A DNA stretch of 64,000 bases, from positions 39,680,001 to 39,744,000 of the forward strand of contig JANJGN010000010.1 of assembly GCA_026770705.1 (NCBI GenBank). The letters run 5' to 3'. Under the pieces are notes generated by a model. That model saw only the letters and a list, made by a program, of their open reading frames with translations. It searched no databases and was not told where the DNA came from. Position 1 is the stretch's first letter. Each line of letters starts with the position of its first letter. A program made the translations under genes and the position numbers. Origin of the DNA: Isurus oxyrinchus. Lineage: Eukaryota. Below are positions 3,306 to 32,504 of the stretch, one piece after another.

Positions 3306-3629
3306 CTCCAAGACACAAGATGAAACTGGACCTTGAAGGCCTGTGTGAAGTTGGGAAATGAAGAACCTCAACTATGAATTCCATCTGATGATATTCTGGC
3401 TTAATTAACAATTTCCATCGACTTTCACGGTAGAAGAAGCCAGTCGCTTCATCTAACTGGGGGTCGGTAGAAGTGATTCCTGGATCATCAGTTCTCTCAT
3501 CATTTTTAAACCACATGAACATTGTTTCTTTTGGAAAGAAGCCATATGCATTGCATACAATCGTTGCTTCTTTTCCTGCCTCTGGGAATTCTGGTTCACA
3601 TCTTATGTATCCTACTAATGGAGGAGATA
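3306..3629 (-). CDS. Gene A exon 8, post-TM C1-like Ig domain, F-strand Cys lost
   Basis: gttacag|TA acceptor, G|gtaag donor, 324 nt. SPPLV..TIVCNAYGFFPKETMFMWFKN..EFIVEVLH. The N-terminal part lies upstream of the ORF-track start. Confidence 0.85.
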
Positions 3630-4089
3630 CTGTAACAACACAAAATAAATGTTAAATGTTGTAGTATCTTGCAAGTTACTTCAATAACTGACAGAAAATA
3701 AAATTTAAAAATGCTAGTAAAGTTATTTGTCACAAACATATAGCTGGAAGATGAGGTTACACTAAATCTCAAATTTTGGTCATTCAGATCCTATTATTTA
3801 GTGAATATCATTGTGTGCCATAATGATATACACAACGCAAATTCAGACATTTAAAATGACTATAGAACCTGTTGCTTGTTTGCATCAAAATTATGCACAT
3901 AAATAATCATTTAAACTGATGTCCTACAAATACATTGCCAGCAAAACTACGTGACATGTCAATGAATGGAACAACGTGTGATTATATCAGGTTTTGGCAT
4001 GAATGTGCTTCTATCCCTCAGTATAGATAATACATTGGGAAAACAAATATTCTGTTTGTATTATGATAAATTATACTATAAAGCAGATG

Positions 4090-4730
4090 TACCAAGCTCA
4101 ACGCAAACTGGAGGAACAGCACCTCATCTACCAACTAGGCACTTTACAGTCTTCCAGACCGAATATTGAGTTCAAAACTTTAGATCATGAACTCTCTCCT
4201 CCATTCCCACCCCCTTTCCAATCCACCTTTTTTTTCCAATAATTTATATATATTTTTCTTTCCCCACCTATTTCCATTATTTTTAAATGTATTTCCATGC
4301 ATTGTTTTATCTCCACCTTTTAGCCTATTTCGATCCCTTCCTCCCACCCCACCCCCATTAGGGCTATCTGTACCTTGCTCATCCTGCTTTCTACCCTTAA
4401 TGTTACCTATTAGCACATTTCTTAGCTACTATCACCACCGTCAGCACCTCTTTGTCCCTTTGTCTATGATATCTTTTGGCAATCTCCACCTATCACTGGC
4501 CCTCTATCCAGCTCTACCTGTCCCACCTTCCCCTCCCCTCCCCCCCCAAACCAGCTTATATTTCCCCTCTCTTCTATTTTTCCTTAGTTCTGTTGAAGAG
4601 TCATACAGACTCGAAACATTAACTGTATTCCTCTCCACAGATGCTGTCAGACCTGCTGAATTTTTCCAGGTATTTTTATTTTTGTTTTTGTTTTGGATTT
4701 CCAGCATCCGCAGTTTTTTGCTTTTATCTT
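4090..4730 (+). mobile_element. Penelope-like element 3' fragment (pLTR)
   Basis: caacgcaaactggaggaacagcacctcatc and the terminus gatgctgtcagacctgctgaatttttccagg..atttccagcatccgcag are shared with the GIY-YIG element at 31-32 kb. Confidence 0.8.
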
Positions 4731-4814
4731 AGTGTACCATATTAATATGCTGCGCTGATAACGGAAATAAAAGTATCAAGCAGTTCATGATATGATTTTC
4801 TCCCTTTTATTAAA

Positions 4815-5090
4815 CAACATGTAATTATATAACACCTTTAACATAGTAAAATGTACTAAGGCATTTCACTGGTGCATTGTTGAACAAAATTTGACACCAA
4901 GTGACATGAGATATTAGGGCAGACTGGTCAAAGGGGTAGGTTTTAAAGGAGCATCTCAAATGAAATAAGATGGGTAGCAAGATCAAGGAAGGAAATTCAA
5001 GAGTTTAGGGCCTCAGGAGCTGCAGAGAGGACCACAAATGATGGAGTGATCAAAACTGGGGATGCGCGAGAAGCCAGAATTGGAGGAGCT
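4815..5090 (-). mobile_element. L2-like LINE 3' fragment
   Basis: Reverse complement resembles an L2-type tail; similar to 24530-25530. Confidence 0.5.
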
Positions 5091-5339
5091 TCATTACATC
5101 TGTTGTAGAAAAATATGCATTGCTTACATGACACTAATGAATAAAGGTAAAATCTGATTGATGGCACAACTCTCTCCAGTTCACAGGCACTATATATATA
5201 TAGCCTAAAAGAAGGATTCTTTTTACATACCCACTCAGCTGCAGGCCACAGATCACAAATACACTACTCTTCCCACTTAATTTTAGAGGCTCTCCTTTAG
5301 CTCCTATCCTTCAGAGGCATTTTTGTCTCTCCCCAAATG

Positions 5340-7510
5340 CTGGCTAACATTAGCTATACTGTAGGCCAAGAGTATAAATCAAGACATAATGCGAGAAAAT
5401 GTGCTGCAATAATCATGGGCAACTTTAATGTTCATATAGATTGGACAAATCAAATTGGTAAAGATAGCCTTCAGGAGTTCACAGAGTCTATTCAGGACAG
5501 TTTCTTAGAAAACTATGCTGTAAAACTAAGGAATGGGCTATTTTAAATCTGGTAAAGTGTAATAAGACAGGATTAATTAATGATCTCACTATAAAGGATC
5601 CTCTAGAGAAGAATGATTATAAACTGAATATGAAATTCAATCATGCTGAGGATGAGAAACTTGGGTCTGAAACCAGTGACTTAAATAAAGGCAATTACAA
5701 AGATATGAAGACTGAGTTGGCTGAAGTGGACTGGAAAAATGGATTAAAAGGTAAGGTAGATATGTAGTGGCAGGCTTTAAGGAGATATTTCATAATTCTC
5801 AACAAAGACATATTCCTGAGAAAGACAGACTTCCAGAAAGATGAACCATATATAGATAAAACAAATGTCGGTCCCTTGGAGGATTTGATGGGGAATTATT
5901 AATGGGAAACAAAGAAATAGCAGACTTTGAACAAATATTTTATTTCTGTCTTCATGATTGAAGACACTAAAAGCATCCCAACAATGGGAGAAAAATAGGA
6001 GGCAAAAGAAAAGAAGGAACTTAAAACAACTGTCACTGGTGGAAAAAGTACTAGGGACCAAAGGCTGACAAGTCTCCTGAACCTGCATCCTAGGGTCTTA
6101 AAAATATAGCTACAGAAATAGTGGATGCATTGGTTGTAATATTCCAAAATTCCCTAGATTCTGGAAAGGACCCAGTGGTTTGGAAAACCTCAAAAGTAGA
6201 GCCTATAATTCAAGCAAGGAGGGAGACAAAAAGCAGGAAATGACTGTCCAGTTAGTCTAAAATCTATCATTGAAAACATGTTGGAATCCATTATTAAAGT
6301 AGTAGTAACTGGAGATTAAGAAAATTAAGAAAAGTAGATTCAACATAGTTTTATAAAAAGGAAATTTTGTTTGACAAATTTATTAGATTTCTTTGAGGGT
6401 GTATGGAGCAGGGTGGATAAAAGAGAATGTCTAGATGTGGTACAATTGGATTTCCAAAAGGCACTCGATAAGGTGACACAAAAGATTACCACAAAATCAG
6501 AGCTCATTGTATTGGAGCTAATATATTAACATGGATAGAGGATTGGCTAACCAGCAGAAAGCAGAGTTAAGAAATACGGATCATTTTCAGGTTGACAAAT
6601 TGAAACCAGTGGAGTGCCGCAGAGATTCGTGCTGCATTTACAATCTATGTTAATGACTTGGATGAAGGGACTGAGTGTGTGGTAACCAAATTTGCTGACG
6701 ATATAATGATAGGTGCAAAAGCAAGTTAGGAGAACACAAATAGTCTGCGAAGGGATATAGATAGGCTTAAGTGGGCAAAAATTTAGCAGATGGAATATAA
6801 TACAGGAAACATGGTAGAAAGAATAGAAAAGCAAGATATTTTTTAAATGGATAGAGACTACAGACTGCTGCAGTATAGAGGAATCTGTGCATCGTCAAAA
6901 ACAAAGCACAAAAAAAGCATGCAGCTACAACAAGTAATTAAGGCAGCAGATGAAATGCTGATCTTTATTGAAAAGGAAATACAGCATAAAAGTAGGGAAG
7001 TATAGCTACAGCTGTTGGCGAAACTACATCTCAAGTATGACAAACTTGTTTTGGTCTCCTTATTTAAGAGGGATGCATTTGCATTGGAGTCAGTTCACAG
7101 AAGGTTCACTAGTTGAGTCCTGGGATGAAGGGGTTGTCTTAAGAGGAAAGGTTGAGCTGGTTGGACCTACACTCATTGGAGTATAAAAGAATGAGAGGTA
7201 ATCTTATTGAAACATGTAAGATTCTGAGGGGGTCTTGTCAGAGTAGATGCTAAGAGGATATTTCAGAATAAGAGGTCACCCATTTAAGATGGAGATGAGG
7301 AGTATATTTTCTCAGAGGGTTGTGAATCTTTGGAGGAACCATGCAGACTGAATATATTTGTGGCTGAAGTTTCCTATAGGGGAGTCATGGATTATGGGGA
7401 ACAGATTGGATCTTGGCCTCAACTCCATTTTCCTATCAGCCACGATCTTATTGAATGGCAGAGCAGCTTTGAGAAGTTGTATGTTCTGAACCTGCTTCTA
7501 CTTCTTATGT
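5340..7510 (+). mobile_element. Degenerate CR1 LINE ORF2
   Basis: Remnants IIMGNFN, KFADD, FWSPYLR and the CR1 3' tail, with many stops and frameshifts. Confidence 0.8.
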
Positions 7511-8683
7511 TCTGGCTCCATTCATTACTCTGAGATGCTATGCTCACAGGTTCTCGGTCATACCTGAAGGCTTTTCCTTTTGAGCACACCACCTGCCACA
7601 AACTGCAGAAAAAAATCCCTTATACAGCAAAATCTACTGCATGTTAAATACACAGCAAAGAAACTAGCCTTGCAAGCTAAGCATCTTCAGACAGTGATGA
7701 TACCAGTAGAAAGAATGCTTCAGGGAACAAACCAGCAGGGAAGAAGTATTCGGGAAGAAACCAACAGGAAAGAGTATCAGGGAGCAAACTAGTGGTGATC
7801 CACTTCATTTGACCTTTGTCTAATCTTTTAATGAATTGAATGCAGATGGAAAAAAACTTGTATTTGATACACAAAGTTTAAAGCTTGTCCGATAAATTGT
7901 GAAAATCTACTACAAGAAATAGGTGAAATGACTATAACAGATACATTCAAGGGGAAGCTAAATAAACACAAAAGCGAGAAAGGAACACAGGGATATGTTA
8001 ATGAAATTAGGAGAAGGAGGGGGATGGGAGGAGGTATGTTTGGAGCATAAATACCAACATTGGGCTGAATGGTCTGTTTTCGTGCTGTTAATACTATATT
8101 GTAATTCAAAACTTTTAGTAGTGTTAGTTTTACTTTTGGAATGGTGGCCTTCAAGATGAAAATGGTCAGTATTAAAGGGAGAAATTATTTTTTCCAACTT
8201 CATCTCCAGTTTCAATTTCAAGTATTCCCAAGTCAAGTCTAGTACAGCCAGCTACTGAGCAAACCCCATTCAGTCTGTCCAGGATTGTAGCTCGAGCCTC
8301 AGCCGGCATCAGTATGAATTTTTCTACTTTCTACGATATTCCTTCTGGCATTTCTGACTAGGTTTCCAGTTTTGTAATGAATAATATTAAGTTAAGGGTA
8401 ATTTCGTGTTCGTGTCAACTAGAAACTGAAGTTGCCAATCTCATTTCATAGAAGACAACAGGCAACAAGGAAAAGAGATCTTCATTTCATCAATCTGGCT
8501 GTTATCGAACTACAACCCTGACATTAAAATAAGGTCCATGAAACCAGTATGTTACCTGTTCCACTAAACAGTTTTTTTTTTACAAAAAAGTTAACAAAAT
8601 CTACCATAGAGGAATTGTTTTCTAAGGCGAACATTAGAATGTTTTAAAATAATATGTTAACAAATATAAAACATTTTACTTAC

Positions 8684-8995
8684 TCAAAGGAATCAGTGCA
8701 TAATCAGTTTTTCTGCACTCTCTGATACTTTCATGTTGGAATTCACAAGTTAACATTTTCCCGATATCTTCCCTAACAGGAACAAATTTCAAATGACTTA
8801 TGAAATTACAAAGGCCATCCTCTCCGAAGACCACTTCAGAATCAGCATTCATTGTCTTCAGTAAGATACCATCCTTTTTCCAAATAACTTTAATAATTTT
8901 TGGAAAGAAGGAATATATTCTACAAGATGCATATGCAGGTTCATCTACAATTGGAATTTCTGGTGACAGTTTTATATTATCACATTTTGGGATAG
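8684..8995 (-). CDS. Gene A exon 7, post-TM C1-like Ig domain
   Basis: ttcttcag|CT acceptor, A|gtaagt donor, 312 nt. ASCRIYSFFP..WKKDG..LTCEFQHES. Confidence 0.85.
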
Positions 8996-10037
8996 CTGAA
9001 GAAAAATGAGAAAAGAAGTTATAAAATTTTGATAGGAATGAACAATAGTGAAACAAACTGCAACAATTTTTTGAACTAATTTTAGATTGAATCATCAAAA
9101 GGAAACAGATAACTGCTAACAGAAACTGACTTCAGCTCAGCAACATCATAAACAATGGTACAAATGTTTGATTTTAATTATACATCTGTATTGCCACCCC
9201 TCCACAAAATGCAATGAAGCAAAGTTAAAAACGAAAAAGCTACTATCTATTCTATCCCTGGATAAGCCCATTAGCTGTACCTCCCTGATCATTTCTGAAA
9301 TGTAACCCCACTGGAAGGGATATTCTAACTTCACAGTGCTGGTCTGCATGCTTTGAAGTTCCCGCCCTAAACGCCTGCACCTCTCCACATCATTCTGCTC
9401 TTTCAAGATTCTCCTTACCCTCCCAATACCTGCTTCTCTAGCTTTTTTCTGATTACACCTCTATGAAGCACCTTCTCCTCAGGGGAATGGCAGACTAGGA
9501 AAGTGTGAATAAGTCAAGAGAAAGTAACTCCAGTCACAAAAACCAGTCTGATATCAAAGTTAAATTCACCATAAATTGAGGTTAAAGCAGATGAGTTCAA
9601 AATTTTAGGAAGATGTTCAATACATTAAAATTAATGCAAAACAGAATCCACTATATTTAATAACCAGAAACTCTTGGTTACAATTTTCAATTCTTCACTT
9701 GATTACTTTCACTGCAGAAAGATAATCCACGAGAAGTACTTCACATTATAACAAATGTCTTTCTCACCCCCAGGTGGAATGTTCCACTATTCTAAGTTGT
9801 TCCTTATCCAAGATCTTATAAATCTTGTCACAGTTTAAGGGGCAATTAGTCCTGGGATTGCAACACAAGCAATATTAGGTAACATTTTTATTGATAATCA
9901 ATCATTTATCCTACCCAATATTCTTTTAACCGCTAAAAATGCATTTCAATTATTGATTCTGTGCTGGGACATGTTAAATATTGTAGATAAATTTGTAGAA
10001 AAGCATTTTAAATAAAATGGAGAAATGCTGACAATAC

Positions 10038-10415
10038 CTTTTATATTTAAATTAACCTCTTTACATATTTTTGAAGCTGTGGCTGGATGTGTTACTTCAC
10101 AAATATATACTGCTCCGCGGTCTTCATTAATGGTTGGTATAAAATGCAAAACACTGGTAACACTGTGCGTCCTATCTTCATATTCCAGCTCAGTTGTACT
10201 GTGGGCATATTTGGGTTGCTCGGTTTCACTCCCTTCAATGAACTCTGCTTGTTCTGGGTGCAGTTTCACAATTTCTTTTGTTACATTGTCCCTCTTTTTG
10301 GACCAAGTGATAGCCAGGGGTCTGGGTTTAAATCCATTAATTGGGCAGGTCACAGCCAGCACTTCTTCATGAATAATACAAGGCGGTATCACTATATCAG
10401 TCATCCTCGGTTCAA
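10038..10415 (-). CDS. Gene A exon 6, post-TM C1-like Ig domain
   Basis: aag|TT acceptor, G|gtattg donor, 378 nt. VTCPINGFKP..ITW..DRTHSVTSVL..YICEVTHPA. Confidence 0.85.
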
Positions 10416-11079
10416 CTTTTTTTTAAAAAAGGGAAAAAATAGAATTATGTTTTAAAAGTTCTCAGAAATTATAAAATATAAACTACTTAAAAAAACACCC
10501 GAGAGTTTATAGAACCTACTACCCTATCAAGTATAAAGGGCAATTCTGAAATCCTGGCCAAAAAAAGCTGCTAATGTTGCAGCTGTAAGATTCAAACTGT
10601 GTGTTGGCAAACTGGTCAGCTGGCCTTGCCAGGTGCTACAAGACAGCCAGGATTTAAAACATGGTCTGCGCTACTTCAGTCATATTCAGAAAATGTAATA
10701 TGGGAGACCATACAAAATATTGCAAATGTGCAGTTTTCAAGGCTCAAATTTAAAAGGACGTACCCACTTAAAAGAAATGGCCAAAGGAGAGAAAACAAAA
10801 TTAAACATTTTAACCTTTACAAATGTAGCATGGGAGAGGAAAAAATGGCAAGCAAGAATTAATCGGCAAGATCTGAGAACAAGTGTGTGTGAAGATCTTA
10901 AACTTAGAAGAATCTCGTAAGTGAAACCATTCCAACAGTACCATATATCTGCTAAACAGCCCAAAGTTCCAAGTCACAAAACATTGCCTTGCTCACCCAT
11001 GCCAAGTCTTCTCTCAACATTACACTTCTTTCACTGTCTCTCATGCCTCTGCAGGGCAAGCAGTCAAGTTGCAGTACAC

Positions 11080-11316
11080 TAAGATAAAAACAAAAAACTG
11101 CAGATGCTGGAAATCTAAAACAAAAAATAAAAATACCTGGAAAAATTCAGCAGGTCTGACAGCATCTGCGGAGAGGAACACAGTTAACGTTTCGAGTTTG
11201 TATGACTCTTCAACAGAACAGGTCTGTTGAAGAGTCATACGGACTCGAAACGTTAACTGTGTTCCTCTCCGCAGATGCTGTCAGACCTGCTGAATTTTTC
11301 CAGGTATTTTTATTTT
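11080..11316. mobile_element. Palindromic Penelope terminus insertion with 14-bp TSD
   Basis: Inverted arms 11124-11217 and 11223-11316. The direct repeat aagttgcagtacac lies at 11066-11079 and 11317-11330. Confidence 0.85.
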
Positions 11317-12220
11317 AAGTTGCAGTACACAACTGAAAGCTTTGTGGAATAGGGGCTTAATTCGATAATCCATTACAACACAAACATAGCCACTTGCTTC
11401 ATATAAAATGAGCCTTCAGTCTGGGCACATGTCAGCATCAGCGTCTTTGCCCTTCCACCCTACTTTGCAAAGTGAAGCAGTGTGATGACATTGGGAAGCT
11501 GTGTCATGTGATCAATTATGAAAGGAGATGAAAGTGCTGATCACCGTAATTGTTTGCTTTGGTGAGCATCACATTAGGTATAGGAATGAAGAGAAGGTGT
11601 AGTAGCATTTATTGGCAATTAGGGATGGGCAATGAACACTAGCCTAGCCAGCAACGCTCTCATCCCGTAAATGAATAAAAAAAATAGCCTAATGGACTGG
11701 TGACCTTGCCTCCCACTAAGGCTGCCATATGTATGTTGTAAGGTGTCTGCAAATGTCCTTTTTGTAGATAGTATAGGCCAAGAACTGATTCCGGGTAATT
11801 TATAATAAACAGGGACAGATGTTCTTAGCCATTTGCAAGATGGTGTGCCAATATCTATATTATGGTATAGTTCCTACTGATTGCCTGGTCATGATTTATT
11901 TTATTCTGTCAGTTCATTCAAAAAAAAAGTGCATGTGAGACAGTTTGTTAAAAAATTACAAATAGTAAATAAAAATTGGCTTCTAAAAATTGCTCTATAG
12001 ATTCCAATAACATGGAATCAAAAACGGTCCTAAATGCGACCAAAAGCTCCTTCACTTATAGCTTGTTCTCATTCTCATCAATTCACAAAGAAAAATGAGC
12101 AAACCTGGCACAAAAGCTACAGAATTGTGTCTGATGCTTGTTCAAATATTCTTCCACATAACCTTGAGCTTAAATGACACTAAGACATAAAATCTGCACA
12201 AGTACTTCATCTATCTAAAT

Positions 12221-13892
12221 CAGGGATTGGCAGCACCTGGCTCTGAAGCCACATGCAGCTAATTAACATCTCATTTTCAGCTCCCAACCTTTTCCAGTTT
12301 AATGGCATTAATTTTTTTAGGTTTTTTTCTAAGTTAAGTCAAGAAAATGACAAATCAAGGAGCTCGAGAGCAACATAATTTTCCTATTGAACTATTCAGT
12401 TGCTTCATCAAAAATTTAGTTTCTGTGCCATTGGGTTTCAAAGTGGCATCTTTAGAAATTATTCTAAACAATATATGCTAATTGTCATCTTAAAAATATA
12501 AATATAATGTTCAAACCACCCTTAACATTACAGTCTCCTAGTTGTTGACAGTTTATCTCATAATTCAATTCACAGATGTCAAAGAATTTAGCATTCACAA
12601 TTATTTAATGCTGGAATTTATTAAATTATATCGAAGTGATATTAGGAGAAATATCACTGGGAATTTGCTCGCTTTTTTTAAAGTGGGGATAAAAAGTTAA
12701 TTAGGCTGCACTTTATGGTTTTGAAAAGTTGAACAAAAACATCATTGTGCTCTAAATAAACTGTTTGAGTGGTATAGCTACAGCACAGTTATAAATAGTG
12801 CTTTTGGCTCAAGCAACAGGTTTTACGGTTGCAACCATTATTGTTTCTGGAATAGGGAAAGCCATAAATTAAATGTGCTGTTAAAATCTGTTCTTTATCA
12901 TTAAAATCAATGGCTGGAAGAACTGTCACAATTCTACGTGAAAAGAAACATATCACAATGATTCTCCAGGATATAATACAAAGTTGAAGACAAATTGAAG
13001 ATCGGTGTAGCATCAAGATTCAACTTTGAAAGCCAAAATAACTGTTTTTACCTATTCAGGCAATGTCGGAACTGGATTTTTTTCCCAATCTATATACAGG
13101 GTTGTTTTTTTTTATTCATTCACGGGGTGTGGGCTTCGCTGGCTCAGCCAGCATTTCTTGCCCATCCCTAACAGCCCTTGCGAAGGTGATGATGAGATGT
13201 CTTCTTGAACCGCTGCAGTCCATGTGGTGTAGGCACACCCACAGTACTGTTAGGGAAGGAGTTCCAGGATTCTGACACAGTGACAGCGAAGGAACAGTGA
13301 TATGTTTCCAACTCAAGATGGTGTGTGGCTTGCAGGGGAACTTCCAGGTGGTGGTCTTCCCATGCATTTGCTGCCCTTGTCCTCCAAGATGAAAGCAGTC
13401 ATGGAAGGCGCTGTCTAAAGAGGCTTGGTGAGTCCTTGCAATGCATCTTGTAGATGGTACACACTGCCACTGTGCATCGGTGGTGGAGGGAGTGAATGTT
13501 TGTGGATGGGGTGCCAATCAAATGGGCTGCTTTGTCTTGGATGAGGTCGGACTTCTTGAGTTGTTGGAACTGCATTCATCCAAGCAAGTGGAGAGTATTC
13601 CATCACACTCCTGACTTGTACCTTGTAGATGGTGGTCAGGCTTTGGGGAATCAGGAGATGGGAGAGGAAATTACCCAAAATTTACTTGTAACTGCAGTCA
13701 CTCTTATAAACGCCAGAGAGATTAATGCAAATGACCTTTTACAGCATCAAATATGTGCATAATATTCCTTAGGCTCCCAATAAACAACTGCTTTCCTCTT
13801 AAGGTGTGCTTATGCTTTTAACCATTGCTTATTTTTGTTTTGTTGAGGTTCCCAATAGTTTGTATTTTTTTTAAACAAGTTGCCAACCCCTA
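12221..13892. mobile_element. Non-autonomous hAT (Charlie-like) DNA transposon, interrupted by a LINE fragment
   Basis: TIRs cagggattggcagc / gttgccaaccccta and an imperfect 8-bp TSD atctaaat / gtctaaat. Confidence 0.6.
13105..13660 (-). mobile_element. CR1-group LINE family 2 (Zenon-like), 3' fragment
   Basis: YKVQVRSVMEYSPLAWM and 3' tail gggatgggcaa..cccgtgaatgaataaaa. Confidence 0.8.
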
Positions 13893-14237
13893 GTCTAAAT
13901 GTACAAGGTTAATGAATTATAGTCCAGTAAGTAATATAGTATCTGCTCTCCAAATGTTGCGATCCTGCTGCATCTATTGCTCTTTATGTAAGGTTAATTC
14001 TAAATACAAGGGCAGTGGAATTAAAGGAGGCAACAAAAAACATACAGAATGAGTTGGATAAAATACATAACTGGACAGAGCGATTAGGGACTTGACATGC
14101 CAGTGACAAGTTTATTCTGGAAACCATTCTACAACAAGATAGTTTCATTGTGTCAAAATAAATGTACATGTATATCTCTTTATGAACAATATTTCTTTGA
14201 CTCTGTTCACTTAGCATCACTTGTAATTTACACTTAC

Positions 14238-14672
14238 TTCCTTCAACTTTCAGCTTGACTTCCTTAATTACAGGCTTTTCAAGGGTACTATGTTGGACTT
14301 GAACCTGGAGGATAGCTTCATTATCTCTATGAATATCAGGCCAGAACATAACTTTACAATTCACACTGGAGCTACCATCATTGTTGTGTTCAACAGCTGG
14401 CATCTCAAATGTGAAGGATTCATCTTGTTCACCAAATTGAGATCCACAATTTGAAATAAGCTGCTGATGGTCATCTACTACAGGATCCTGCAAGTCCCTC
14501 GGTGTATAGTTCCACTGATGAATGGTATTTGGTTTACTTTCCCATTTTCTTTGTAGCAACCAGTGAACAGAAATATTCTTGGGCCTATACCCAGAAATCT
14601 GACAATTCAGAAGAGCTTCTTGCAAATGTATAATCCGTGGAGGTTTGCTGATGTCAGAAACTTTTGGAGGAA
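14238..14672 (-). CDS. Gene A exon 5, post-TM C1-like Ig domain with ~40-aa loop insertion, F-strand Cys lost
   Basis: tttttag|TT acceptor, A|gtaagt donor, 435 nt. VPPKV..LLNCQISGYRP..W..NNDGSSSV..LQVQVQHSTL. Confidence 0.85.
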
Positions 14673-16565
14673 CTAAAAAAAGAACATTTGGCAGTTAATC
14701 CATTCTTGATCACGAGCCTGTCATTTCAAAAATATCAGCATGAATACATCCTATGCTGGACATTATTACTGGAATAACAAATATTAACACAATACAACAG
14801 TAGAGGTAAGCTCTAACTAAAAATGAAATAAAATAACCTGTTTCTTATTGAAACAAATGATCATTAGGATTCCTGAGTTAAAATAAAAGTATGAGAGGTA
14901 GAAAGGCACAAATAGACAAATCACAAACCAAGTATGAAACTAAGGCAAAAGTACAGAAACATCAAGATAAAAGGACAGAAGTCAGTAACTAAACAGAACA
15001 GCAGAGATCAGTAATGCATGAAGGAAGCCAGTGTTCCACAAAATAGTGAGAAAATCATCCAAGAAAAATCTAGACCCAGAGGGAAATCAAATAGGCATAG
15101 AGATCTGGGGAGAAAGATCAGTGGACATAAAAATCAGGCAACCACCACAATGAGTGTCACAAGAAGGGAGAGAGAGGACAAAATAGAGAGACATTATGTG
15201 TCTCACCATGAGCAACATTATAGGAGATTTAAAATATACTGGTATCTTAAAAACAATCTTACATCTCCAAATATGCCTCATGACACTTGACTTCCTGCTA
15301 TCACTCTCTTATTACTCTTTTTATAAATTGTTCTGCTCAGATTTACAATGGTTTTGCTGATGCAACCAAGTCATTTTGTGAAATCTTGGAACACAAGTTC
15401 CCACAAATAACTCAAAATACTTTGTAAAATAGTTTTGCATCCAACATTATAACTATTAGTTTCTGCGGGAAATAATATCAAAATAAGATGTAAAAATACT
15501 TGTAATTATCATATCAACATGATTAAATTCATTGATGTCTTCTAATGCATTCATTAAAGTTTTTACTGAAGACTTCAGCCTGGCCCAAAGCCTTGGCTTA
15601 GAATTGACGCATTTGTTTGAATCTGTGACTTTCAGTTGAATTTATTTTTTGTACTATGGCCACATGTAGGGCACCGAATTTGTCTGGATATATTCGTACC
15701 AGTTAGCTGTACCATTTTCATCAGCTGCTAGCACTTACACCTGGAAGTATTCTTGGGCAAGAAATCAAATGGGATACATTTCAAAAGCATAATAAAATAT
15801 ATTGATTTTTTTTAAAAACAATATTTATGAATGATCAGCACTGGTGTGTTAACAGAACACTGTATTGTGTTTATAAACTCGGAAAATATATTTAGCCGAA
15901 TGTGAGACAGAGGTGAGAACACACAAAGGGGTGAGAGCATGAGCACTCACAAACATGATAGTGGTGTGGCGGGAGGGCAAACAGGGAGAAGCAGTAGTTT
16001 TCAAGCTCCTTGCATTTAATTTCTACATTTCCTGCTCCTCAGTTCAGAGCTGTTATTTCATTTTGAGTGAAATGTTCAAGCCAGAGAACAGAAGTTCATG
16101 ATATCTTATGAATATTTATATTTCCCTCTTTTGATGGACATTGTAACTTTAATCTGAGCTGTTCAGAAGTAAACAAATGCAAAGTAGTATTTAGTCACAT
16201 GCAGAGTAAAATAGTTATTTTTAAAAATGTGGAGTTTGGTAACTTAAGAAAAAAGCCTGGGTTAATACTTTGTTTACAGTACTTTTGACTATTTGCAAAT
16301 AATATTGATAAAACTAAGTTTATTCCCAAAAATCTAAAGTTTCTTATTTGAAAGGCCTGCTATGTTGGGGCTCCTTGCCAATATACCGCAGTAATATCAC
16401 TCATGCTGCTTCTTGCATAACTTTAGATTGACCTCTGATAAAATCAATAGTTGCCCAGTTCTAAGAAAAGCACTCAAACAAAAACTCCAACAGAGATGAG
16501 CCATCTCAGTACAGATCAAGAATAATCCCTCTTGTATTTCTAAAGTGATTTGAAGAATATTTTAC

Positions 16566-16682
16566 CTTTTCTGAAATACTTCAAGTACATTAAAAATCCA
16601 ATGCCAATGATTGCTGTACACACCAATATGCTAACAATGACACTTGCAGTTATTATCCCCACTGGTATAACAACTTCTGGCT
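16566..16682 (-). CDS. Gene A exon 4, transmembrane segment
   Basis: ctacag|AG acceptor, G|gtaaaa donor, 117 nt. EPEVVIPVGIITASVIVSILVCTAIIGIGFLMYLKYFRK is a hydrophobic helix followed by basic stop-transfer residues. Confidence 0.85.
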
Positions 16683-17069
16683 CTGTAGATAAAATAAACA
16701 TGTATTTCAACTGTGAATAGCAAAATGGAGCAATATCTGTAAACTGAGACTTATTCCAAGACAATGGTTTATCTTAAAAGTAAAATAAAATACAAATGGA
16801 CAGCAAGTTGATAAAGTTTAACGCCTCATGTTAAAGGCTCTCAGAGTTGTGATTAATATTAACCTATATCCCTCAAATGTTGATCAGTCTTTGCATCTTT
16901 TCAGAATTTCTTGATTTTACTTGAGCTCCAGAATTTGAAGTTTTTCTAAATCTTCACAATACTTCTAAGAAATGAAAACATTACTATGATGTAGCTTTCT
17001 TAACTCATTGTACACTGCACTGGTCAGGAACAGTATGTCACATCAATTAAAAAAAATTCAAAATTCCAG

Positions 17070-19975: not shown

Positions 19976-20069
19976 AGGCTTGATGATAACCTAACTTGAA
20001 TTTCATCCTTGGATGTAAATTTGGTGTTTAAGTACGGCTAGAGGCAAGACCAGCGATTTAAGTAGCTGT

Positions 20070-22289: not shown

Positions 22290-22610
22290 CTTTGACAGTC
22301 AGTTGGGTTGTCAATTGTAAAGCTTCACTAAGTGATCGGTGTTTCACATAGCATATATAAGTATTGCCATCATCTTGGAGAGTTGGGCGCAACCTCAAAC
22401 GGCTAGAAACACTGTAGGTTCCATCATCATTTTTAACTGGAGATCCTGTGCAGATGTGTTTTGAAATTATTTGTTCACCATCTTTTGTTTTTTGTCTCCA
22501 ATTCATCTCAATTGAGACAGGATAAAAGCCAACAATGTCACACTTCACTGACTTCTCCGTACCATTCTCAATTGTGATTGTGGCCGAGGATAAGCTCACC
22601 TTTGGTGAGG
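22290..22610 (-). CDS. NCR3LG1: Gene A exon 3, extracellular Ig C1-set domain
   Basis: ttcacag|CC acceptor, G|gtaagt donor, 321 nt. ASP..KCDIVGFYP..W..KNDDGTYSVSS..YICYVKHRSL is a canonical C1 pattern similar to the B7-H6 C1. Confidence 0.9.
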
Positions 22611-23862: not shown

Positions 23863-24225
23863 CTGAAACAGTCATTGATGATTTTCCACTTCCATTATCT
23901 GGGGTTATAAAAACAACACAAGTGTAATCTCCTTCTTCAGCAAATTGCACATTTGGAAGAAAAAGAGAAGCGATTCCCATCTTTAAGTCGTCATCAAGAA
24001 TTGTTGCTCCTTTTCTGTACGGCGTATGTTTTCCACTAGTGAATTGATACACCTCTTGTCTGAGTGTATCTGGAGTGCCTAATTTTTGGAAGAACCACTG
24101 GACCCCCATGTTTTTAAGGTCAATTTCTCTCATATGACCAGACACTCGGCATTCAAGATGAACATCATCATTTACTTTGGCTTTCACAGTTCTTGAATTC
24201 ATTGACACAATTAGGTCACCTTGCT
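23863..24225 (-). CDS. NCR3LG1: Gene A exon 2, Ig V-set domain (B7-H6-like)
   Basis: ttgcag|AG acceptor, G|gtaaga donor, 363 nt. VHLEC..MGVQWF..GIASLFLPNVQFAEEGDYTCVVFITP has the canonical C-W-DxxYxC pattern and matches recalled B7-H6 motifs (MGITWF, GDASLRLP, YRCEVVVTP). Confidence 0.9.
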
Positions 24226-25530: not shown

Positions 25531-26159
25531 ATGCTGCACAGATATCATACTTTAACATATTTATGATACATTTTGAGCAATGATTCATGGTGGCACATAT
25601 TTGGTAAAATACAAAGGTGCTTAAATGCTAAAGGTAGTTGCTTTCCCCAAAGACAAGACATTAAGCAATTAATTAGCTTGTCTCAAAATTCAATAAATAT
25701 TTGGCAAGAATTGCACTTGGGAGTCTCAGGTCCAGGGCGCTTGACAAAGGAACTGTAGGCTTTCCTTTCCAGCTACTCATGGAAAAGAAAAAATAGAGAC
25801 AATGACACATGAATCTAGTTCAGTAGAGGCTGCAGGGTGAAACATTGGAGTGGAGTATTTGATTTTTCTTAAGCCAAGAGAAATGATGTAGTGATGTGGG
25901 GTAAAATAGTGCATTCATTATTTTGTTTTACACAAAAACAAGTTGCATGGATTGAACCAACTGAATGTGATACCTGTCCTATGTTTATTTCTATAAAATA
26001 AAGTAACTTAACAATTTACATTTATCATCTGACCTATTGTTTGCTTCCATCCCTCTGAAGATGGACTGAATGTATGTACAAACATGATTATCAAGTCATA
26101 GAAGGGTACCTATGCCAAATCCCTGTCTCATGCAATCGTATGGTTAGATACTGAGCGCA

Positions 26160-28977
26160 CAGGGAGGTGATGGCATAGTGGTACTCACTGGACTTGTAAT
26201 CCAGAGACCCAGGGTAATGCTCTGAATACTACCATGGCAAACAGTGAACTTTGAATCAAAAATATCTGGAATTAAAAGTCTAATGATGACCATGAAACCA
26301 TTGTCGGTTGTCGTAAAAACCCATCTAATTCACTAATGTCCTTTAAGGAAGAAAATCTGCCTTTCACACCTGGTATGGCCTACTTGTGACTCCAAACCCA
26401 AAGCAATATGGCTGACTCTGAAATGGCCTGGCAAGCCACTCAGTTGTATCAAACTGTTAAAAAGCCGAAAAGGAATGAAACTGGATTGACCACACAGCAT
26501 CAACCTTGGCACCGGAAACAACAAAGGCAAACTCAGCTCTGTTAATCCTGCAAAGTCCTCCTTACTAACATCTGGGGCTTGTGCCAACATTGGGAGAGCT
26601 GTCTCACAGACTAGTCAAGCAACAGCCTGGTACTCACAGAATCATATCTTACAGATAATGTCCCACAAACCACCAGCAAAAGTAGTGGCACACTGGTATA
26701 CAGTCGGGAGGGGGTTGCCCTGGGAGTCCTCGGCATCGATTCCATGAAGTCTCAAAGCATCAGGCCAAACATGGGCAAGGAAACCTCCTGCTGATTAGTA
26801 CCTACCGCTGCCCCTCCCGCCCTCTCTCTCTCCCCACCCACCCCCCTACCCACCCCCACCCTCCCACCCACCCCCCTACCCACCCCCACCCTCCCACCCA
26901 CACCCACCCCCACCCCCATACCCCCCACCCACCCCCACACACTTCTATTGATGAATCAGTACAGCTCCATGTGGACCATGACTTGGAGGAAGCACCGAGG
27001 GTAGCAAGAGCGCAGATTGTAATCTGGGCGGGTGACTTCATTGTCCATCACCAGGAGTGGCTCAGTAGCACCGCTACTGACCGAGCTGGCTGAGTCCTAA
27101 AGGACACAGCTGCTAGACTGGGTCTGTGGCAGGTGATGAAGGAACCAACAAGAGGGAAAAACATACTTAACCTCATTCTCATCAACCTTCATCTGTCCAT
27201 GTCAGTATCGATAGGAGTGACAACAGCACAGTCTTTGTGGAGACGAAGTCCCATCTTCACATTGAGGATACCCTCCAGCATGTTGTGTGATACTACCACT
27301 ATGCTAAATGTGATAGATTTTGAACAGATCTAACAACTCAAGATTGGTCAACCATGAGGCGCTGTGGGCCATCATCAGCAGCAGAACTGTATTCAACCAC
27401 AATCTATAGCCTCATGGCCTGGCATATAACACAGTCCACCATTACAACCAAGCCAGGGGGTCAACACTGATTCAATGAAGAGTGCAGCAGGACATGCCAG
27501 GATAAGCATCAGGCATACCTAAAAATGAGGTGTCAACTTAATGAAGCTACAACATAGGACTAGTGTGCCAAATGGCATAAGCAACAAGCGATAGACAGAG
27601 CTAAGCTACTCCAAAAGCAACAGATCAGGACTAGGCTCTGCGGTCCTGCCACATCCAGTTGTGAATGATGGTGGGCAATTAAACAACACTCTGGCAGAGG
27701 AAGCTCCACAAATATCACCATCATCAATGATGGAGGATCCAAGCACATCAGCTCAAAAGATAAGGCTGAAGCATTTGCAACAATCTAGTCAAGCAACAGC
27801 CTGACACTCACGGAATCATCTCTTACAGATAATGCCCCAGACACCACCAGCAGAAGTAGCGGCACAATGGTATACAGTCACGGTGCAAAGATTGCAGCAT
27901 TTGATCGACTGTGGCATCAAGTCACAGTCTAGTCAAACTGGAGTCAACTGGAATCAGGTGGAAAGCTCTCCACTGGTCATACCTAGCACAAAGGAAGATG
28001 GTTGTGATTGATGGAGATCAATCATCTCAGTTCCAGGATATCATTGCTGGAGTTTCTCAGGGTCATATCCTTGGCCCAACTATCTTCAGCTGCTTCATCA
28101 ATGACCTTCCTTCTATCGTAAGGTCAGAAGTGGGGATGTTCTCTGATGATTGCACAATGTTCAGCACCATTGGCGACTCCTCAGACACTGTTGCAGTCCT
28201 CGTCCAAATGCAGCAAGACCTGGACAATAGCCAGGCTTGGGCTGACAAATGGCAAGTAACATGCACGCCACACAAGTGCCGGGAAATGACCATCTCCAAC
28301 AAGGGAGAATCTAACCTTCACCCCTTGACATCCAATAGCATTATCATCACTGAATCCCCCACTATCAATATCCTGAGCATTACCACTGACCAGAGACTGA
28401 ACTGGACTAGCCATTAAATACTGTGGCTACAAGAGGGGGTCAGAAGCTAGGAATCATCCTGACTCCCCAAAGCCCATCCACCATCTACAAGGCACGAGTC
28501 AGGAGTGTGGTGGAATACTCTCCACTTGCCTGGATGAGTGCAGCTCCAACAACACTCAAAAAGCTTGACACCATCCAGGACAAAGCAACCTGCTTGATTG
28601 GCACACCATCCACAAATAATCAGTCCGTCCACCACCGATGCACAGTGACAGCAGTGTGTACCATCTACAAGGTGCACTGCAAGAATTCACCAAGCCTCCT
28701 TCAACAGCACCTTCCAAATCTTCTAGAAGGACAAGGGGAGCAGACACATGGGAACACCAACACCTGGAATTTCTCCTCCAAGCCACTCACCATCCTGATT
28801 TGGAAATATATCACTGTTCCTTCACTGTTGCTGGGTCAAAATCCTGGAACTCCCTCCCTAACAGTACTGAGGGTGAACTACACCACATGCATTACCACCT
28901 TCTGAAGGGCAATTAGGGATGGGCAATAAATGCTGGCCAAGTCATTGATGCCCACATTCCATGAATGAATAAAAAGA
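26160..28977 (+). mobile_element. Near full-length CR1-group LINE family 2 with tRNA-like head and single APE-RT ORF (degenerate)
   Basis: Head tggcatagtgg; APE start NIWGL..LGELSHRLVKQQP at about 26566; RT (SQGHILGPTIFSCFINDL, MFSDD); tail catgaatgaataaaa. Confidence 0.85.
26811..26942. repeat. C-rich (CCCACCC)n simple repeat; G-rich on gene A sense strand
   Basis: Tandem ccacccacccccctacccaccccc units inside the LINE. Confidence 0.85.
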
Positions 28978-29219
28978 CATAAACATAAGACACTCAGATG
29001 ACTTAAATTGAGCTTGTAAACTCAGAGCTGTAAGTTTCAAGTTCTGTAAAGGAATTTCAAGGATCTAAATTCTAGATTAAGGAACAGAAGTGCCAGAGTT
29101 GTAATTCCTCGATTACTCCTTGTGCCATACACTAGACCAGACAGACAATGAAACATTTTGATTGTCATTGTGTGGCTGGGGGGAAGGTTTTCAGATTTCT
29201 TTGACATGATGCTTCAATT

Positions 29220-29760
29220 GTAGAGCCTTGGTCAAAACCAATACGGGTTACTGCGTTCAGTTTTGAGCACTGAATCTTGGAAAATATAAATTGACTTTGG
29301 ACGGGGTGCAGCACAGATTGTCAGAATGATAGCAAGACAAAGGGTGAAATTATGAGGTTTGGTTGTATAAACCTGGCTTGTATTCTCTTGAATTTAAAAG
29401 GCTGGGGTAATCTAATTAAGGTGTTAAAATGGTAAAGTTTCAATAGGGTAGATGCTACTGCTTTTCTATTGGGCAAATCCAGAACAAGGGAGCATAATCT
29501 TAAAATTAGAACTAAGCCGTTCAAAGGGAAATCAGGAAGCACTCCTTCACACAAAATGTAGCAGAAGTCTGGAACATACACTCCTCCAAAAAGCTATTGG
29601 AGCTCAGCCAATTGAAAATGTCAAAACTGAAATTGAGACTTTTGTTAGACAAGGATATTAGGGTCACTGCACCGACATGCAGCTAAGATCCAAACTAGCC
29701 ATGATCTGACTGAATAGTGAAATAGGCTCAAGGGGCTATTTCCCATTCCTATGTTCCAAA
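29220..29760 (+). mobile_element. Degenerate CR1 3' fragment
   Basis: YRALV..YCVQF remnant and CR1 tail. Confidence 0.65.
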
Positions 29761-30110
29761 AAGTGTATAGCAACAGATCCGCACCTGATGAAAGTTTTAC
29801 TTGATTGGAAGTGAAACAATATCAGCACAGCATTGCCTGGTGAAATTGGGAACTTTCACAAGCAGTACTAGTGCAGAGTCTCACCGGGCTATGTAGTTTG
29901 GAGAGAAAAAATAAGGATGAGAAAATTAAAAAGCAACAGAGGAAAGATCTTCAGAAAATTCATCAACTTGGTTGCCTTCCATCTTTAAGCCCCTGTGCTG
30001 AAGTAGGCTGCTATGTTAGCTGATGTCACTTAGTACAACCACTGGGGCACCTCACAGCTTCCAGTCCTCACCCAGGCAGCAAAGGAGGGAAACCAGATAC
30101 GACTTCTGGA

Positions 30111-32079
30111 ACAAAAACAGAATTACCTGGAAAAAACTCAGTAGGTCTGGCAGCATCGGCGGAGAAGAGTTGACGTTTCGAGTCCTCATGACCCTTCGAC
30201 AGAACTTGAGTTCGAGTCCAAGAAAGAATTGAAATATAAGCTGGTTTAAGGTGTGTGTGTGGGGGGCGGAGAGATAGAGAGAGAGAGGTGGGGGGGTGTG
30301 GTAGTAGGGACAAACAAACAGTGATAGAAGCAGATCATCAAAAGATGCCAACGACAATAGTACAATAGAACACATAGGTGTTAAAGTTAAAGTTGGTGAT
30401 ATTATCTAAACGAATGTGCTAATTAAGAATGGATGGTAGGGCACTCAAGGTATAGCTCTAGTGGGGTTTTTTTTTTATATATAATGGAAATAGGTGGGAA
30501 AAGGAAAATCTTTATAATTTATTGGAAAAAAAAGAAAGGGGGAAACAGAAAGGGGGTGGGGATGGGGGAGGGAGCTCACGACCTAAAGTTGTTGAATTCA
30601 ATATTCAGTCCGGATGGCTGTAAAGTGCCTAGTCAGAAGATGAGGTGTTGTTCCTCCAGTTTGCGTTGGGCTTCACTGGAACAATGCAGCAAGCCAAGGA
30701 CAGACATGTGGGCAAGAGAGCAGGGTGGAGTGTTAAAATGGCAAGCGACAGCGAGGTTTGGGTCATTCTTGTGGACAGACCACAGGTGTTCAGCAAAGCG
30801 GTCGCCCAGTTTACGTTTGGTCTCTCCAATGTAGAGGAGACCACATTGGGAGCAACGAATGCAGTAGACTAAGTTGGGGGAAATGCAAGTGAAATGCTGC
30901 TTCACTTGAAAGGAGTGTTTGGGTCCTTGGACGGTGAGGAGAGAGGAAGTGAAGGGGCAGGTGTTGCATTTTTTGCGTGGGCATGGGGTGGTGCCATAGG
31001 AGGGGGTTGAGGAGTAGGGGGTGATGGAGGAGTGGACCAGGGTGTCCCGGACATCTTCCCTTCACCCCCCTTATCGGCACTCCGTAGGGATCGCTCCCTC
31101 CGGGACACCCTGGTCCACTCCTCCATCACCCCCTACTCCTCAACCCCCTCCTAAGGCACCACCCCATGCCCACGCAAAAGATGCAACATCTGCCCCTTCA
31201 CTTCCTCTCTCCTCACCGTCCAAGGACCCAAACACTCCTTTCAAGTGAAGCAGCATTTCACTTGCATTTCCCCCAACTTAGTCTACTGCATTCGTTGCTC
31301 CCAATGTGGTCTCCTCTACATTGGAGAAACCAAACGTAAACTGGGCGACCGCTTTGCAGAACACCTGTGGTCTGTCCGCAAGAATGACCCAAACCTCCCT
31401 GTCGCTTGCCATTTTAACACTCCACCCTGCTCTCTTGCCCACATGTCTGTCCTTGGCTTGCTGCATTGTTCCAGTGAAGCCCAACGCAAACTGGAGGAAC
31501 AACACCTCATCTTCCGACTAGGCACTTTACAGCCATCCAGACTGAATATTGAATTCAACAACTTTAGGTCGTGAGCTCCCTCCCCCATCCCCACCCCCTT
31601 TCTGTTTCCCCCTTTCTTTTTTTTCCAATAAATTATAAAGATTTTCCTTTTCCCACCTATTTCCATTACATATATTAAAAAAAAACCACTAGAGCTATAC
31701 CTTGAGTGCCCTACCATCCATTCTTAGTTAGCACATTCGTTTAGATAATATCACCAACTTTAACACCTATGTGTTCTATTGTACTATTGTCGTTGACATC
31801 TTTTGATGATCTGCTTCTATCACTGTTTGTTTATCCCTACAACCACAGCCCCCCCCCCACCTCTCTCTCTCTCTCTATCTCTCCGCCCCCCACACACACA
31901 CCTTAAACCAGCTTATATTTCAACTCTTTCATGGACTCGAACTCAAGTTCTGTCCAAGGGTCATGAGGACTCAAAACGTCAACTCTTTTCTTCTCCGCCG
32001 ATGCTGCCAGACCTGCTGAGTTTTTCCAGGTAATTCTGTTTTTGTTTTGGATTTCCAGCATCCACAGTTTTTTTGTTTT
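30111..32079. mobile_element. Penelope-like element, inverted duplication encoding the GIY-YIG endonuclease C-terminus, with 13-bp TSD
   Basis: Arms 30111-31051 (-) and 31099-32045 (+). FTCISPNLVYCIRCSQCGLLYIGETKRKLGDRFAEHL. TSD tacgacttctgga at 30098-30110 and 32080-32092. Confidence 0.9.
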
Positions 32080-32428
32080 TACGACTTCTGGATACTACTC
32101 ATCTGTCAAACAGCCCCTGGACAGTCAATGTTTAAGCACAGTAACAAAATATATTGTTTTAATGCATACAATTTCAACTAAAGTTATTTTAGTAACAAAA
32201 TAAAAGTGAAAGTCAGGAATAATTCATGTACATTTTTTTTAATCGCATTAACTTCTGCTTTGCAACCCAATCCCCAAAAGGAACATCAGTAACAGACGAG
32301 AGAGGGTTGGCTCTGCTCCAATATCATTTTAAACCCGGGAAAATCCGCAGCCAAAGTACAAACCCAGCCTGAAGCCGGCCCGATTAGCGCTCCGCCCGCT
32401 CACTGCCACCGCCCGTCCCGTCCTTTAC

Positions 32429-32504
32429 CTGAAAGCGGTGCCAGAGTCACCAGCGCGACCACGACCTGTATCAGGAACGGCAACGAGTTCTCGGCCCAGC
32501 CCAT
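32429..32504 (-). CDS. NCR3LG1: Gene A exon 1, signal peptide MGWAENSLPFLIQVVVALVTLAPLS
   Basis: Strong Kozak GGGGCCATGG, hydrophobic core, donor TCAG|gtaaag, 76 nt (phase 1), inside a CpG-rich island. Confidence 0.85.

What the first reader, a model, noticed from the sequence alone, without database searches (positions are those of the whole stretch)
3306..32504. B7-H6-like receptor/ligand with a tandem array of C1 Ig domains on the cytoplasmic side
Seen: signal peptide, V, C1 and a single TM exon (followed by KYFRK) splice in frame to at least four further C1-type exons, and I found no second TM exon between them. Established: C1-set domains are normally lumenal or extracellular (Ig, TCR, MHC, tapasin, SIRP, B7-H6), B7-family tails are usually short, and human B7-H6 has a Gag-derived tail. 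Inference: this is a type I protein with an NKp30-ligand-like ectodomain and a large intracellular Ig-C1 scaffold, which would be an unusual immune signalling or sensor architecture. I cannot confirm that it is undescribed.
Basis: partly seen in the sequence, partly recalled or inferred. Interest (0 to 1): 0.92.

Follow-up and report, generated by a model that had tools for sequence, protein, structure and literature searches.

The report
Shark B7-H6 with post-membrane Ig array
This is a shark version of the natural-killer-cell ligand B7-H6 whose main messenger RNA places at least four antibody-constant-type (C1) domains after the membrane-spanning helix, so probably inside the cell; many non-mammalian vertebrates share this layout and I found no paper that describes it.

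Summary
On the minus strand, a signal-peptide exon, V, C1 and a 117-nt TM exon are followed by four phase-1 C1-type exons. Spliced contigs from four runs of four studies join the TM exon directly to the next Ig exon (16566|14672, GT..AG).

The gene is 89-98% identical to great white shark LOC121283124 and collinear with a 980-aa nurse-shark entry deposited as B7H6. The V exon's best solved relatives are human B7-H6.

The V-C1-TM-(C1)n layout occurs in 90 of the 150 best family representatives, from chimaera to snakes.

A cytoplasmic location is inferred, not shown:
- There is a signal peptide, one TM with KYFRK after it, and no second TM.
- Only 49% of tail domains keep the canonical cysteine pair, against 85-95% in extracellular controls.
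- The tail has half the glycosylation-sequon density.

Caveats:
- Two lamniform isoforms skip the TM exon, which would give an all-secreted form.
- Two tail domains keep invariant cysteine pairs.

No open paper describes the layout, and two key papers were not held. First readers noted similar genes in other windows of this genome.

The parts
32587..32598 (-). ISRE-type motif (GAAAGTGAAACT) about 85-95 nt upstream of the ATG. A second GAAANNGAAA-type site lies at 32514-32524.
   Evidence: Pattern search and sequence read. A motif match only; no function tested.
32429..32504 (-). Coding part of exon 1: ATG and signal peptide, with a phase-1 donor after 32429.
   Evidence: 89% identical to residues 1-28 of the great white orthologue P0183.
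23863..24225 (-). V-set Ig exon (B7-H6-like).
   Evidence: Pfam V-set 3.2e-11. Best PDB relatives are B7-H6 6yjp, 3pv6 and 4zso at 8e-13 to 2e-12. 90% identical to P0183.
22290..22610 (-). Extracellular C1-set Ig exon.
   Evidence: Pfam C1-set 2.3e-13. PDB hits: UrIg2, IgA1, B7-H6. 96% identical to P0183.
16566..16682 (-). TM cassette exon of 117 nt (39 codons, phase 1-1): a hydrophobic helix followed by KYFRK.
   Evidence: Present in contigs of four runs and joined to the next exon. 97% identical to P0183. AF2 predicts a helix at 263-290 of P0183.
14238..14672 (-). Tail Ig exon 1 (Ig3): C1-like with a roughly 40-residue insert. It has the B-strand Cys but no F-strand Cys.
   Evidence: Joint 16566|14672 in RNA contigs. 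94% identical to P0183. Pfam C1-set 19.6 bits, below the 21-bit cut-off.
10038..10415 (-). Tail Ig exon 2 (Ig4): C1-set with the canonical Cys pair.
   Evidence: Pfam C1-set 1.3e-09. Acceptor read. 98% identical to P0183.
8684..8995 (-). Tail Ig exon 3 (Ig5): C1-set with the canonical Cys pair.
   Evidence: Pfam C1-set 9.9e-08.. Collinear with P0183 residues 564-667.
3306..3629 (-). Tail Ig exon 4 (Ig6): C1-like, with the B-strand Cys only. A phase-1 donor follows, so the gene continues beyond the window start.
   Evidence: 98% identical to P0183 residues 668-776. The terminal coding exon is not in 1-3305.

Best explanation
This is a lamniform-shark orthologue of B7-H6 (NCR3LG1). B7-H6 is the V-C1 self-ligand of NKp30-type natural-killer receptors.

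Its predominant mRNA encodes a signal peptide, V, C1 and one TM helix. An array of C1-set Ig domains follows in frame straight after the stop-transfer residues KYFRK. Four of these domains lie in the window; related sharks have four or six.

By ordinary type I topology, V-C1 faces outward and the Ig array lies in the cytoplasm. I infer that it folds there without disulfides and acts as a conserved docking or clustering scaffold that couples the ligand to intracellular partners.

The 117-nt TM exon is a phase-1 cassette. Skipping it, as annotated in two lamniform sharks, would convert the protein into a fully secreted multi-Ig chain.

Shown: the gene model, the TM-to-Ig splice in RNA, orthology, and conservation of the architecture.
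Inferred: the compartment of the tail and its scaffold role.
For: Gene model and RNA:
- The joint 16566|14672 appears in contigs of four runs from four studies. One 3957-nt contig carries 352 nt upstream of the TM exon and 3051 nt downstream of Ig3. Contigs of 1265 and 1033 nt carry about 711 nt upstream of the TM exon, the length expected for the C1 exon, the V exon and part of exon 1.

Orthology:
- The exons are 89-98% identical and collinear with great white isoform X1 (781 aa). They are collinear with nurse-shark 'B7H6' QTT61907.1 at 60-83%.
- The V exon's best solved relatives are B7-H6.
- Snake and frog proteins that NCBI names NCR3LG1 have the same layout.

Family breadth:
- A profile of the tail exons finds 311 representatives at E<1e-30.
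- 90 of the best 150 have an internal TM followed by three or more Ig domains.
- Of the 41 annotated sequences (isoforms, paralogues and fragments) checked, 38 keep the TM.

Topology:
- There is a single TM, with a mean net charge of +2.6 just after it.
- The canonical Cys pair is kept in 49% of 505 tail domains. It is kept in 85% of ecto C1 domains and 95% of classical Ig-heavy-chain-like arrays. The core Trp stays at 95% in tail domains.
- N-glycosylation sequons per 100 aa: 0.69 in the tail, 1.22 in the ectodomain, 1.42 in Ig-heavy-like chains.

Functional constraint:
- Tail domains are as conserved across 21 cartilaginous fishes (0.56-0.64 mean identity) as V (0.70), C1 (0.66) and TM (0.63).
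- AF2 folds them as beta-sandwiches at pLDDT of about 85-92.
Against: - No experiment shows the topology.
- Isoform X2 of great white and of basking shark lacks exactly the 39 TM residues. A secreted form is therefore likely real, and the tail may act there.
- Ig4 and Ig5 keep both canonical cysteines in all 21 cartilaginous-fish orthologues. Ig3 has an invariant B-strand plus E-strand cysteine pair. Both would fit disulfides formed in the secretory pathway.
- Tail sequons are still slightly above random expectation (O/E 1.2).
- In run X1 an unspliced contig runs from the TM exon into the intron. Read-through stops after 8 codons, so a short-tailed membrane form is possible.
- The scaffold role is a guess. 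No partner is identified.
Confidence: 0.68

Rival explanations
1. The Ig array works mainly outside the cell. The functional long product is the TM-skipped, secreted V-C1-(C1)n chain, acting as a soluble ligand or decoy. In TM-containing transcripts the tail is a tolerated by-product, or those transcripts are mostly truncated by intron retention to give a short-tailed membrane B7-H6.
For: - TM-less isoforms X2 are annotated in two lamniform sharks.
- Canonical cysteines are invariant in Ig4 and Ig5.
- Sequon O/E in the tail is 1.2.
- An unspliced TM-exon-to-intron contig appears in X1, with a stop 8 codons into the intron.
Against: - In three of the four runs, the listed contigs that cover the 5' end of Ig3 come from the TM exon.
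- 38 of 41 annotated sequences, including the nurse-shark lab deposit, keep the TM.
- The TM exon and the basic residues after it are conserved across cartilaginous fishes (0.63 identity).
- Half of the tail domains family-wide lack the disulfide, which is rare for secreted C1 domains.
- Ig6 lacks the F-strand Cys in cartilaginous fishes yet is well conserved.
Confidence: 0.2
2. The downstream C1 exons belong to a separate tandem gene, or the join is an artefact of phase-1 exons being joinable by chance.
For: - All IgSF exons here are phase 1-1, so any join is in frame.
- Similar exons of a neighbouring paralogue lie upstream at 62053-49037.
Against: - Spliced contigs in four runs join the TM exon to Ig3.
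- Gene models and deposits from many species are collinear through the TM into the tail.
Confidence: 0.02

Closest known systems
Human B7-H6 (NCR3LG1), ligand of NKp30
   Same: The layout is signal peptide, V-set, C1-set and a single TM. B7-H6 chains are the best solved relatives of the V exon (8e-13) and among the best for the C1 exon (7e-14). Orthologues are named B7H6/NCR3LG1 in nurse shark, snake and frogs.
   Different: By my own knowledge (not tested here), the human tail is non-Ig, with a Gag-derived C-terminal part. Here the tail is an array of four or more C1-set Ig domains. Binding to NKp30 was not tested.
UrIg2 / UrIg (non-rearranging shark antigen-receptor-like genes; PMC12227049, PDB 9dmx)
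   Same: A V domain followed by many C1-set domains. UrIg2 is the top solved hit for the ecto C1 exon and a high hit for the tail profile.
   Different: UrIg2 has a VJ domain, nine C1 domains and then the TM at the C-terminal end, so all its Ig domains are extracellular. Here the TM sits after the first C1. The V domain is B7-type.
Ig heavy chains with many constant domains (IgM, and what I take to be IgW/IgD-type chains)
   Same: The tail domains are C1-set. Their best solved sequence relatives are Ig heavy-chain constant domains. Representatives with long C1 arrays and a C-terminal TM, which I take to be Ig heavy chains, also appear in the profile search.
   Different: Those chains have the TM at the C-terminus and keep the canonical disulfide in 95% of domains. 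Tail domains here keep it in 49%.
Cytosolic Ig-domain arrays of muscle proteins (titin, obscurin)
   Same: These are tandem Ig beta-sandwiches working in a reducing compartment without disulfides. Titin I65-I70 is the top Foldseek match of the whole model as a multi-Ig chain.
   Different: Those are I-set domains of soluble cytoskeletal giants. Here the domains are C1-set by sequence and are tethered to a type I immune ligand.
SIRP and tapasin/TAPBPR
   Same: These are V plus C1 ectodomain families. Some tetrapod members of this family are auto-named 'SIRP-like'.
   Different: TAPBPR hits to the V exon are much weaker (3.5e-05) than B7-H6 hits. SIRP has V-C1-C1 before the TM and a short ITIM tail.

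Membership tests
B7-H6 / NCR3LG1 (B7 family) | IgV followed by an IgC1 ectodomain behind a signal peptide. | tested here: met
   Pfam V-set 3.2e-11 and C1-set 2.3e-13. Signal peptide read.
B7-H6 / NCR3LG1 (B7 family) | Closest sequence relatives are B7-H6 rather than other B7, butyrophilin, tapasin or SIRP proteins. | tested here: met
   The top three PDB hits of the V exon are B7-H6, then CD276 and BTN1A1. The nurse-shark orthologue is deposited as B7H6, and snake and frog relatives are named NCR3LG1. No tree with mammalian B7 genes was built.
B7-H6 / NCR3LG1 (B7 family) | Single-pass type I membrane protein. | tested here: met
   One hydrophobic helix with KYFRK after it. AF2 helix at 263-290. 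No second TM in orthologues.
B7-H6 / NCR3LG1 (B7 family) | Binds NKp30 (NCR3). | not testable with these tools
   Needs a binding assay with shark NCR3-family receptors.
B7-H6 / NCR3LG1 (B7 family) | Non-Ig cytoplasmic tail (Gag-like in human). | tested here: not met
   The tail is made of C1-set Ig domains. This feature describes the mammalian protein, not necessarily the ancestral one.
C1-set Ig domain (tail exons) | Match to the C1-set profile above the curated threshold. | tested here: met
   Ig4 scores 38.7 bits and Ig5 32.7 bits against a cut-off of 21. Ig3 scores 19.6 bits, just below it. Ig6 was scanned only as a truncated ORF. The profile of all tail exons hits Ig constant domains at 1e-30 to 1e-39.
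C1-set Ig domain (tail exons) | Canonical B-F disulfide cysteines and core Trp. | tested here: inconclusive
   In the window, Ig4 and Ig5 have both cysteines, while Ig3 and Ig6 lack the F-strand Cys. Family-wide, the pair is present in 49% of tail domains and the Trp in 95%.
UrIg / UrIg2 | VJ-type V domain, C1 array, and TM at the C-terminal end. | tested here: not met
   Here the TM follows the first C1 and the V is B7-type. The UrIg2 architecture is taken from PMC12227049.

The most novel reading that the evidence does not exclude
Ancestral B7-H6 carried a functional cytosolic array of antigen-receptor-type (C1-set) constant domains. This would be the first case of C1-set domains working inside the cell. 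The array would have been conserved from chimaeras and sharks through coelacanth, lungfish, amphibians and reptiles, and no such tail was seen in the few mammalian hits. A cassette TM exon would let the same Ig array be placed either inside the cell or secreted.
Probability: 0.5. Interest if true: 0.85.

Novelty: new variant of a known kind. Interest (0 to 1): 0.72.

Why it matters
C1-set domains are treated as a hallmark of extracellular adaptive-immunity molecules: Ig, TCR, MHC, tapasin, SIRP and B7-H6.

If the array is cytoplasmic, three things follow:
- It would overturn that rule.
- It would imply that the ancestral NKp30 ligand had a large, strongly conserved intracellular module of unknown partners.
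- It would raise the question of what replaced that module in mammals.

The idea is directly testable by tagging, redox and glycan mapping, and interactome work. It may also explain how surface display of this stress ligand is controlled.

If only the secreted isoform uses the array, the finding is less far-reaching. It would still document a TM-cassette switch between a membrane and a long soluble B7-H6.

Tried and rejected
- Two-gene or chance-join reading: rejected by spliced contigs and collinear orthologues.
- UrIg2 identity: rejected. Its TM is at the C-terminal end and its V is VJ-type.
- Second TM: none found in the window exons or in the orthologues.
- Tail homodimer test (complex prediction, two copies of P0183 residues 293-781): no verdict, score 0.00. 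This is not evidence either way.
- Foldseek on the whole model gave only generic multi-Ig chains.
I could not fetch orthologue DNA, so no dN/dS was computed.
- Literature searches for cytoplasmic or intracellular Ig, IgSF or C1-set domains and for shark B7H6 found nothing relevant.
- Flajnik et al. 2012 (PMC3709836) and Kinlein et al. 2021 (PMC8273117) are not held. I cannot exclude that they mention the tail.
Exons were searched by reference, and natural orthologues (P0183, P0008, P0193) stood in for the full-length protein.
- Read laying covered only 11001-17000. The C1-to-TM joint and the Ig3-Ig4-Ig5-Ig6 joints therefore rest on contig lengths and orthologue models, not on laid reads.


Full report
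**Observation.**
The gene lies on the minus strand. I mapped these exons:
- ATG at 32504, with a signal-peptide exon ending at donor 32429
- V exon 24225-23863
- C1 exon 22610-22290
- a 117-nt TM exon 16682-16566, ending KYFRK
- four further Ig exons at 14672-14238 (Ig3), 10415-10038 (Ig4), 8995-8684 (Ig5) and 3629-3306 (Ig6)

All junctions are phase 1 with AG/GT sites.

Pfam calls V-set (3.2e-11) and C1-set for the ecto C1 exon (2.3e-13), Ig4 (1.3e-09) and Ig5 (9.9e-08). Ig3 is just under the threshold. Ig6 was scanned only as a truncated ORF. The full Ig6 exon aligns with the others, sharing the usual C1 landmarks.

Phase-1 IgSF exons can always be joined in frame, so the in-frame join alone proves little.

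**RNA.**
I laid contigs of four runs from four studies on 11001-17000. All four contain the joint 16566|14672, which skips 1893 nt with GT..AG on the minus strand.
- One contig of 3957 nt carries the TM exon and Ig3, with 352 nt upstream and 3051 nt downstream.
- Contigs of 1265 and 1033 nt carry about 711 nt upstream of the TM exon. That is the length expected for the C1 exon, the V exon and part of exon 1.
- In three runs, the listed contigs that reach the 5' end of Ig3 come from the TM exon.
- Run X1 also has an unspliced contig running from the TM exon into the intron. Read-through there would stop after 8 codons.

The runs are only guessed to be RNA, but spliced contigs imply cDNA. Only this 6-kb stretch could be laid. 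The other joints therefore rest on contig lengths and on orthologues.

**Identity.**
A profile of the tail exons (A1) found 4286 representatives at E<=0.001 and 311 at E<1e-30.

The window's exons are 89-98% identical to great white shark LOC121283124 isoform X1 (781 aa) and collinear with it. They are 67-84% identical to the horn shark model. They are 60-83% identical to a 980-aa nurse-shark protein deposited as 'natural killer cell cytotoxicity receptor 3 ligand (B7H6)', QTT61907.1.

The V exon's best solved relatives are human B7-H6 chains, followed by CD276 and butyrophilin. The C1 exon hits UrIg2, IgA and B7-H6.

The window comes from a lamniform shark close to, but not identical with, the great white. 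The last coding exon of that orthologue is not in 1-3305, so the gene runs off the window.

**Breadth.**
Of the 150 best representatives, 90 have an internal TM followed by three or more Ig domains. Another 21 have only a C-terminal TM; several of these carry a TM motif that I recognise, from memory, as that of Ig heavy chains. I used these 21 as a control.

Members come from sharks, rays, chimaera, coelacanth, lungfish, bichir, frogs, salamanders, lizards, a snake and a turtle. Most are named 'uncharacterized'. A few are named NCR3LG1 or SIRP-like.

A second subfamily, V-C1-TM-3 Ig of about 610 aa, is conserved in squamates, turtles and frogs. I saw no bird or mammal member in these limited samples.

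Exons at 62053-49037 are the last four tail domains of a neighbouring paralogue. That paralogue is orthologous to whale shark LOC109934976.

**Is the array cytoplasmic?**
For:
- There is an N-terminal signal peptide, one strongly hydrophobic helix and no second TM. The mean net charge after the TM is +2.6 across 90 proteins.
- The canonical B-F cysteine pair is kept in only 49% of 505 tail domains, and 25% have neither cysteine. It is kept in 85% of ecto C1 domains of the same proteins and in 95% of domains in the C-terminal-TM control arrays. The core Trp stays at 95% in tail domains, so misalignment is not the cause.
- N-glycosylation sequons run at 0.69 per 100 aa in the tail. They run at 1.22 in the ectodomain and 1.42 in Ig-heavy-like chains.
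- The tail is under constraint. Mean identity across 21 cartilaginous fishes is 0.56-0.64 per tail domain. It is 0.70 for V, 0.66 for C1 and 0.63 for the TM.
- AF2 folds the tail domains as beta-sandwiches at pLDDT of about 85-92, with a TM helix at 263-290.
- Ig6 has had no F-strand cysteine since before the chimaera-shark split, yet it is well conserved.

Against:
- Isoform X2 of great white and of basking shark lacks exactly the 39 TM residues, which gives an all-secreted chain.
- Ig4 and Ig5 keep both cysteines in all 21 orthologues. Ig3 has an invariant B-strand plus E-strand pair.
- Tail sequon O/E is still 1.2.

Of the 41 annotated sequences (isoforms, paralogues and fragments) I checked, 38 keep the TM. 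I therefore take the TM-containing form as the main product and the cytosolic location as likely. It is not shown.

**Mechanism.**
Shown: the gene model, the splice, the orthology and the conserved architecture.

Inferred:
- V-C1 is displayed as an NKp30-type ligand.
- The tail is a disulfide-independent intracellular rod of C1 domains that docks conserved partners or drives clustering.
- TM-exon skipping releases a soluble form.

An ISRE-type motif lies about 85-95 nt upstream of the ATG, which hints at interferon control. A homodimer test of the tail gave no verdict.

**Comparison and novelty.**
UrIg2 (VJ, nine C1 domains, then the TM) places all its Ig domains outside the cell. Ig heavy chains do the same. 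Titin-type cytosolic arrays are I-set.

Eight completed full-text searches found no paper describing post-TM Ig or C1 domains or the shark B7H6 architecture. The two most relevant papers are not held. The nurse-shark deposit shows that specialists have the full sequence.

I rate this a new variant of a known kind. It carries a real risk that the feature has already been remarked on in print.

**Limits.**
Natural orthologues were used instead.
- First-reader notes report similar genes elsewhere in this genome. I did not test those.

Noticed in passing
window 49037-62053 (-): Four C1-like exons (62053-61739, 59736-59425, 58409-58098, 49405-49037, the last ending in a stop). They are the final tail domains of a neighbouring paralogue. 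They are 61-71% identical to the C-terminal four domains of whale shark LOC109934976, whose V-C1-TM part must lie beyond 64000.
   Followed up: partly
window 32514-32598 (-): GAAAGTGAAACT (ISRE-type) about 85-95 nt upstream of the ATG, and a second GAAAGAGAAAG just before the ATG. The pattern occurs 8 times in the window against 2.3 expected.
   Followed up: partly
window 16540-16565 (-): If the donor after the TM exon is not used, the frame stops after 8 codons. That would give a classical short-tailed V-C1-TM protein. Run X1 has an unspliced contig covering 14778-16595.
   Followed up: partly
window 30433-31717: Two mirror-image copies of the same ORFs on opposite strands (30633-30905 minus and 31245-31574 plus; 30433-30834 plus and 31316-31717 minus). 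One ORF looks to me like a GIY-YIG endonuclease motif, as in Penelope-like retroelements. The pair is inserted head-to-head in intron 1.
   Followed up: no
window 189-3113 (+): ORFs that look like LINE-type reverse transcriptase, on the opposite strand. They sit inside the intron that follows the last tail exon in the window.
   Followed up: no
window 14713-14844 (-): A strongly hydrophobic ORF in the intron between the TM exon and Ig3. The RNA contigs splice it out, so it is not a second TM exon.
   Followed up: yes
P0167 vs P0191 (Hemiscyllium), P0177/P0194-P0198 (Chiloscyllium paralogue): Annotated isoforms differ by whole tail Ig exons. For example, Ig3 is skipped in epaulette shark X2, and the bamboo shark paralogue has six isoforms. 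The TM is kept in all of them, so the tail length appears to be varied by exon skipping.
   Followed up: partly
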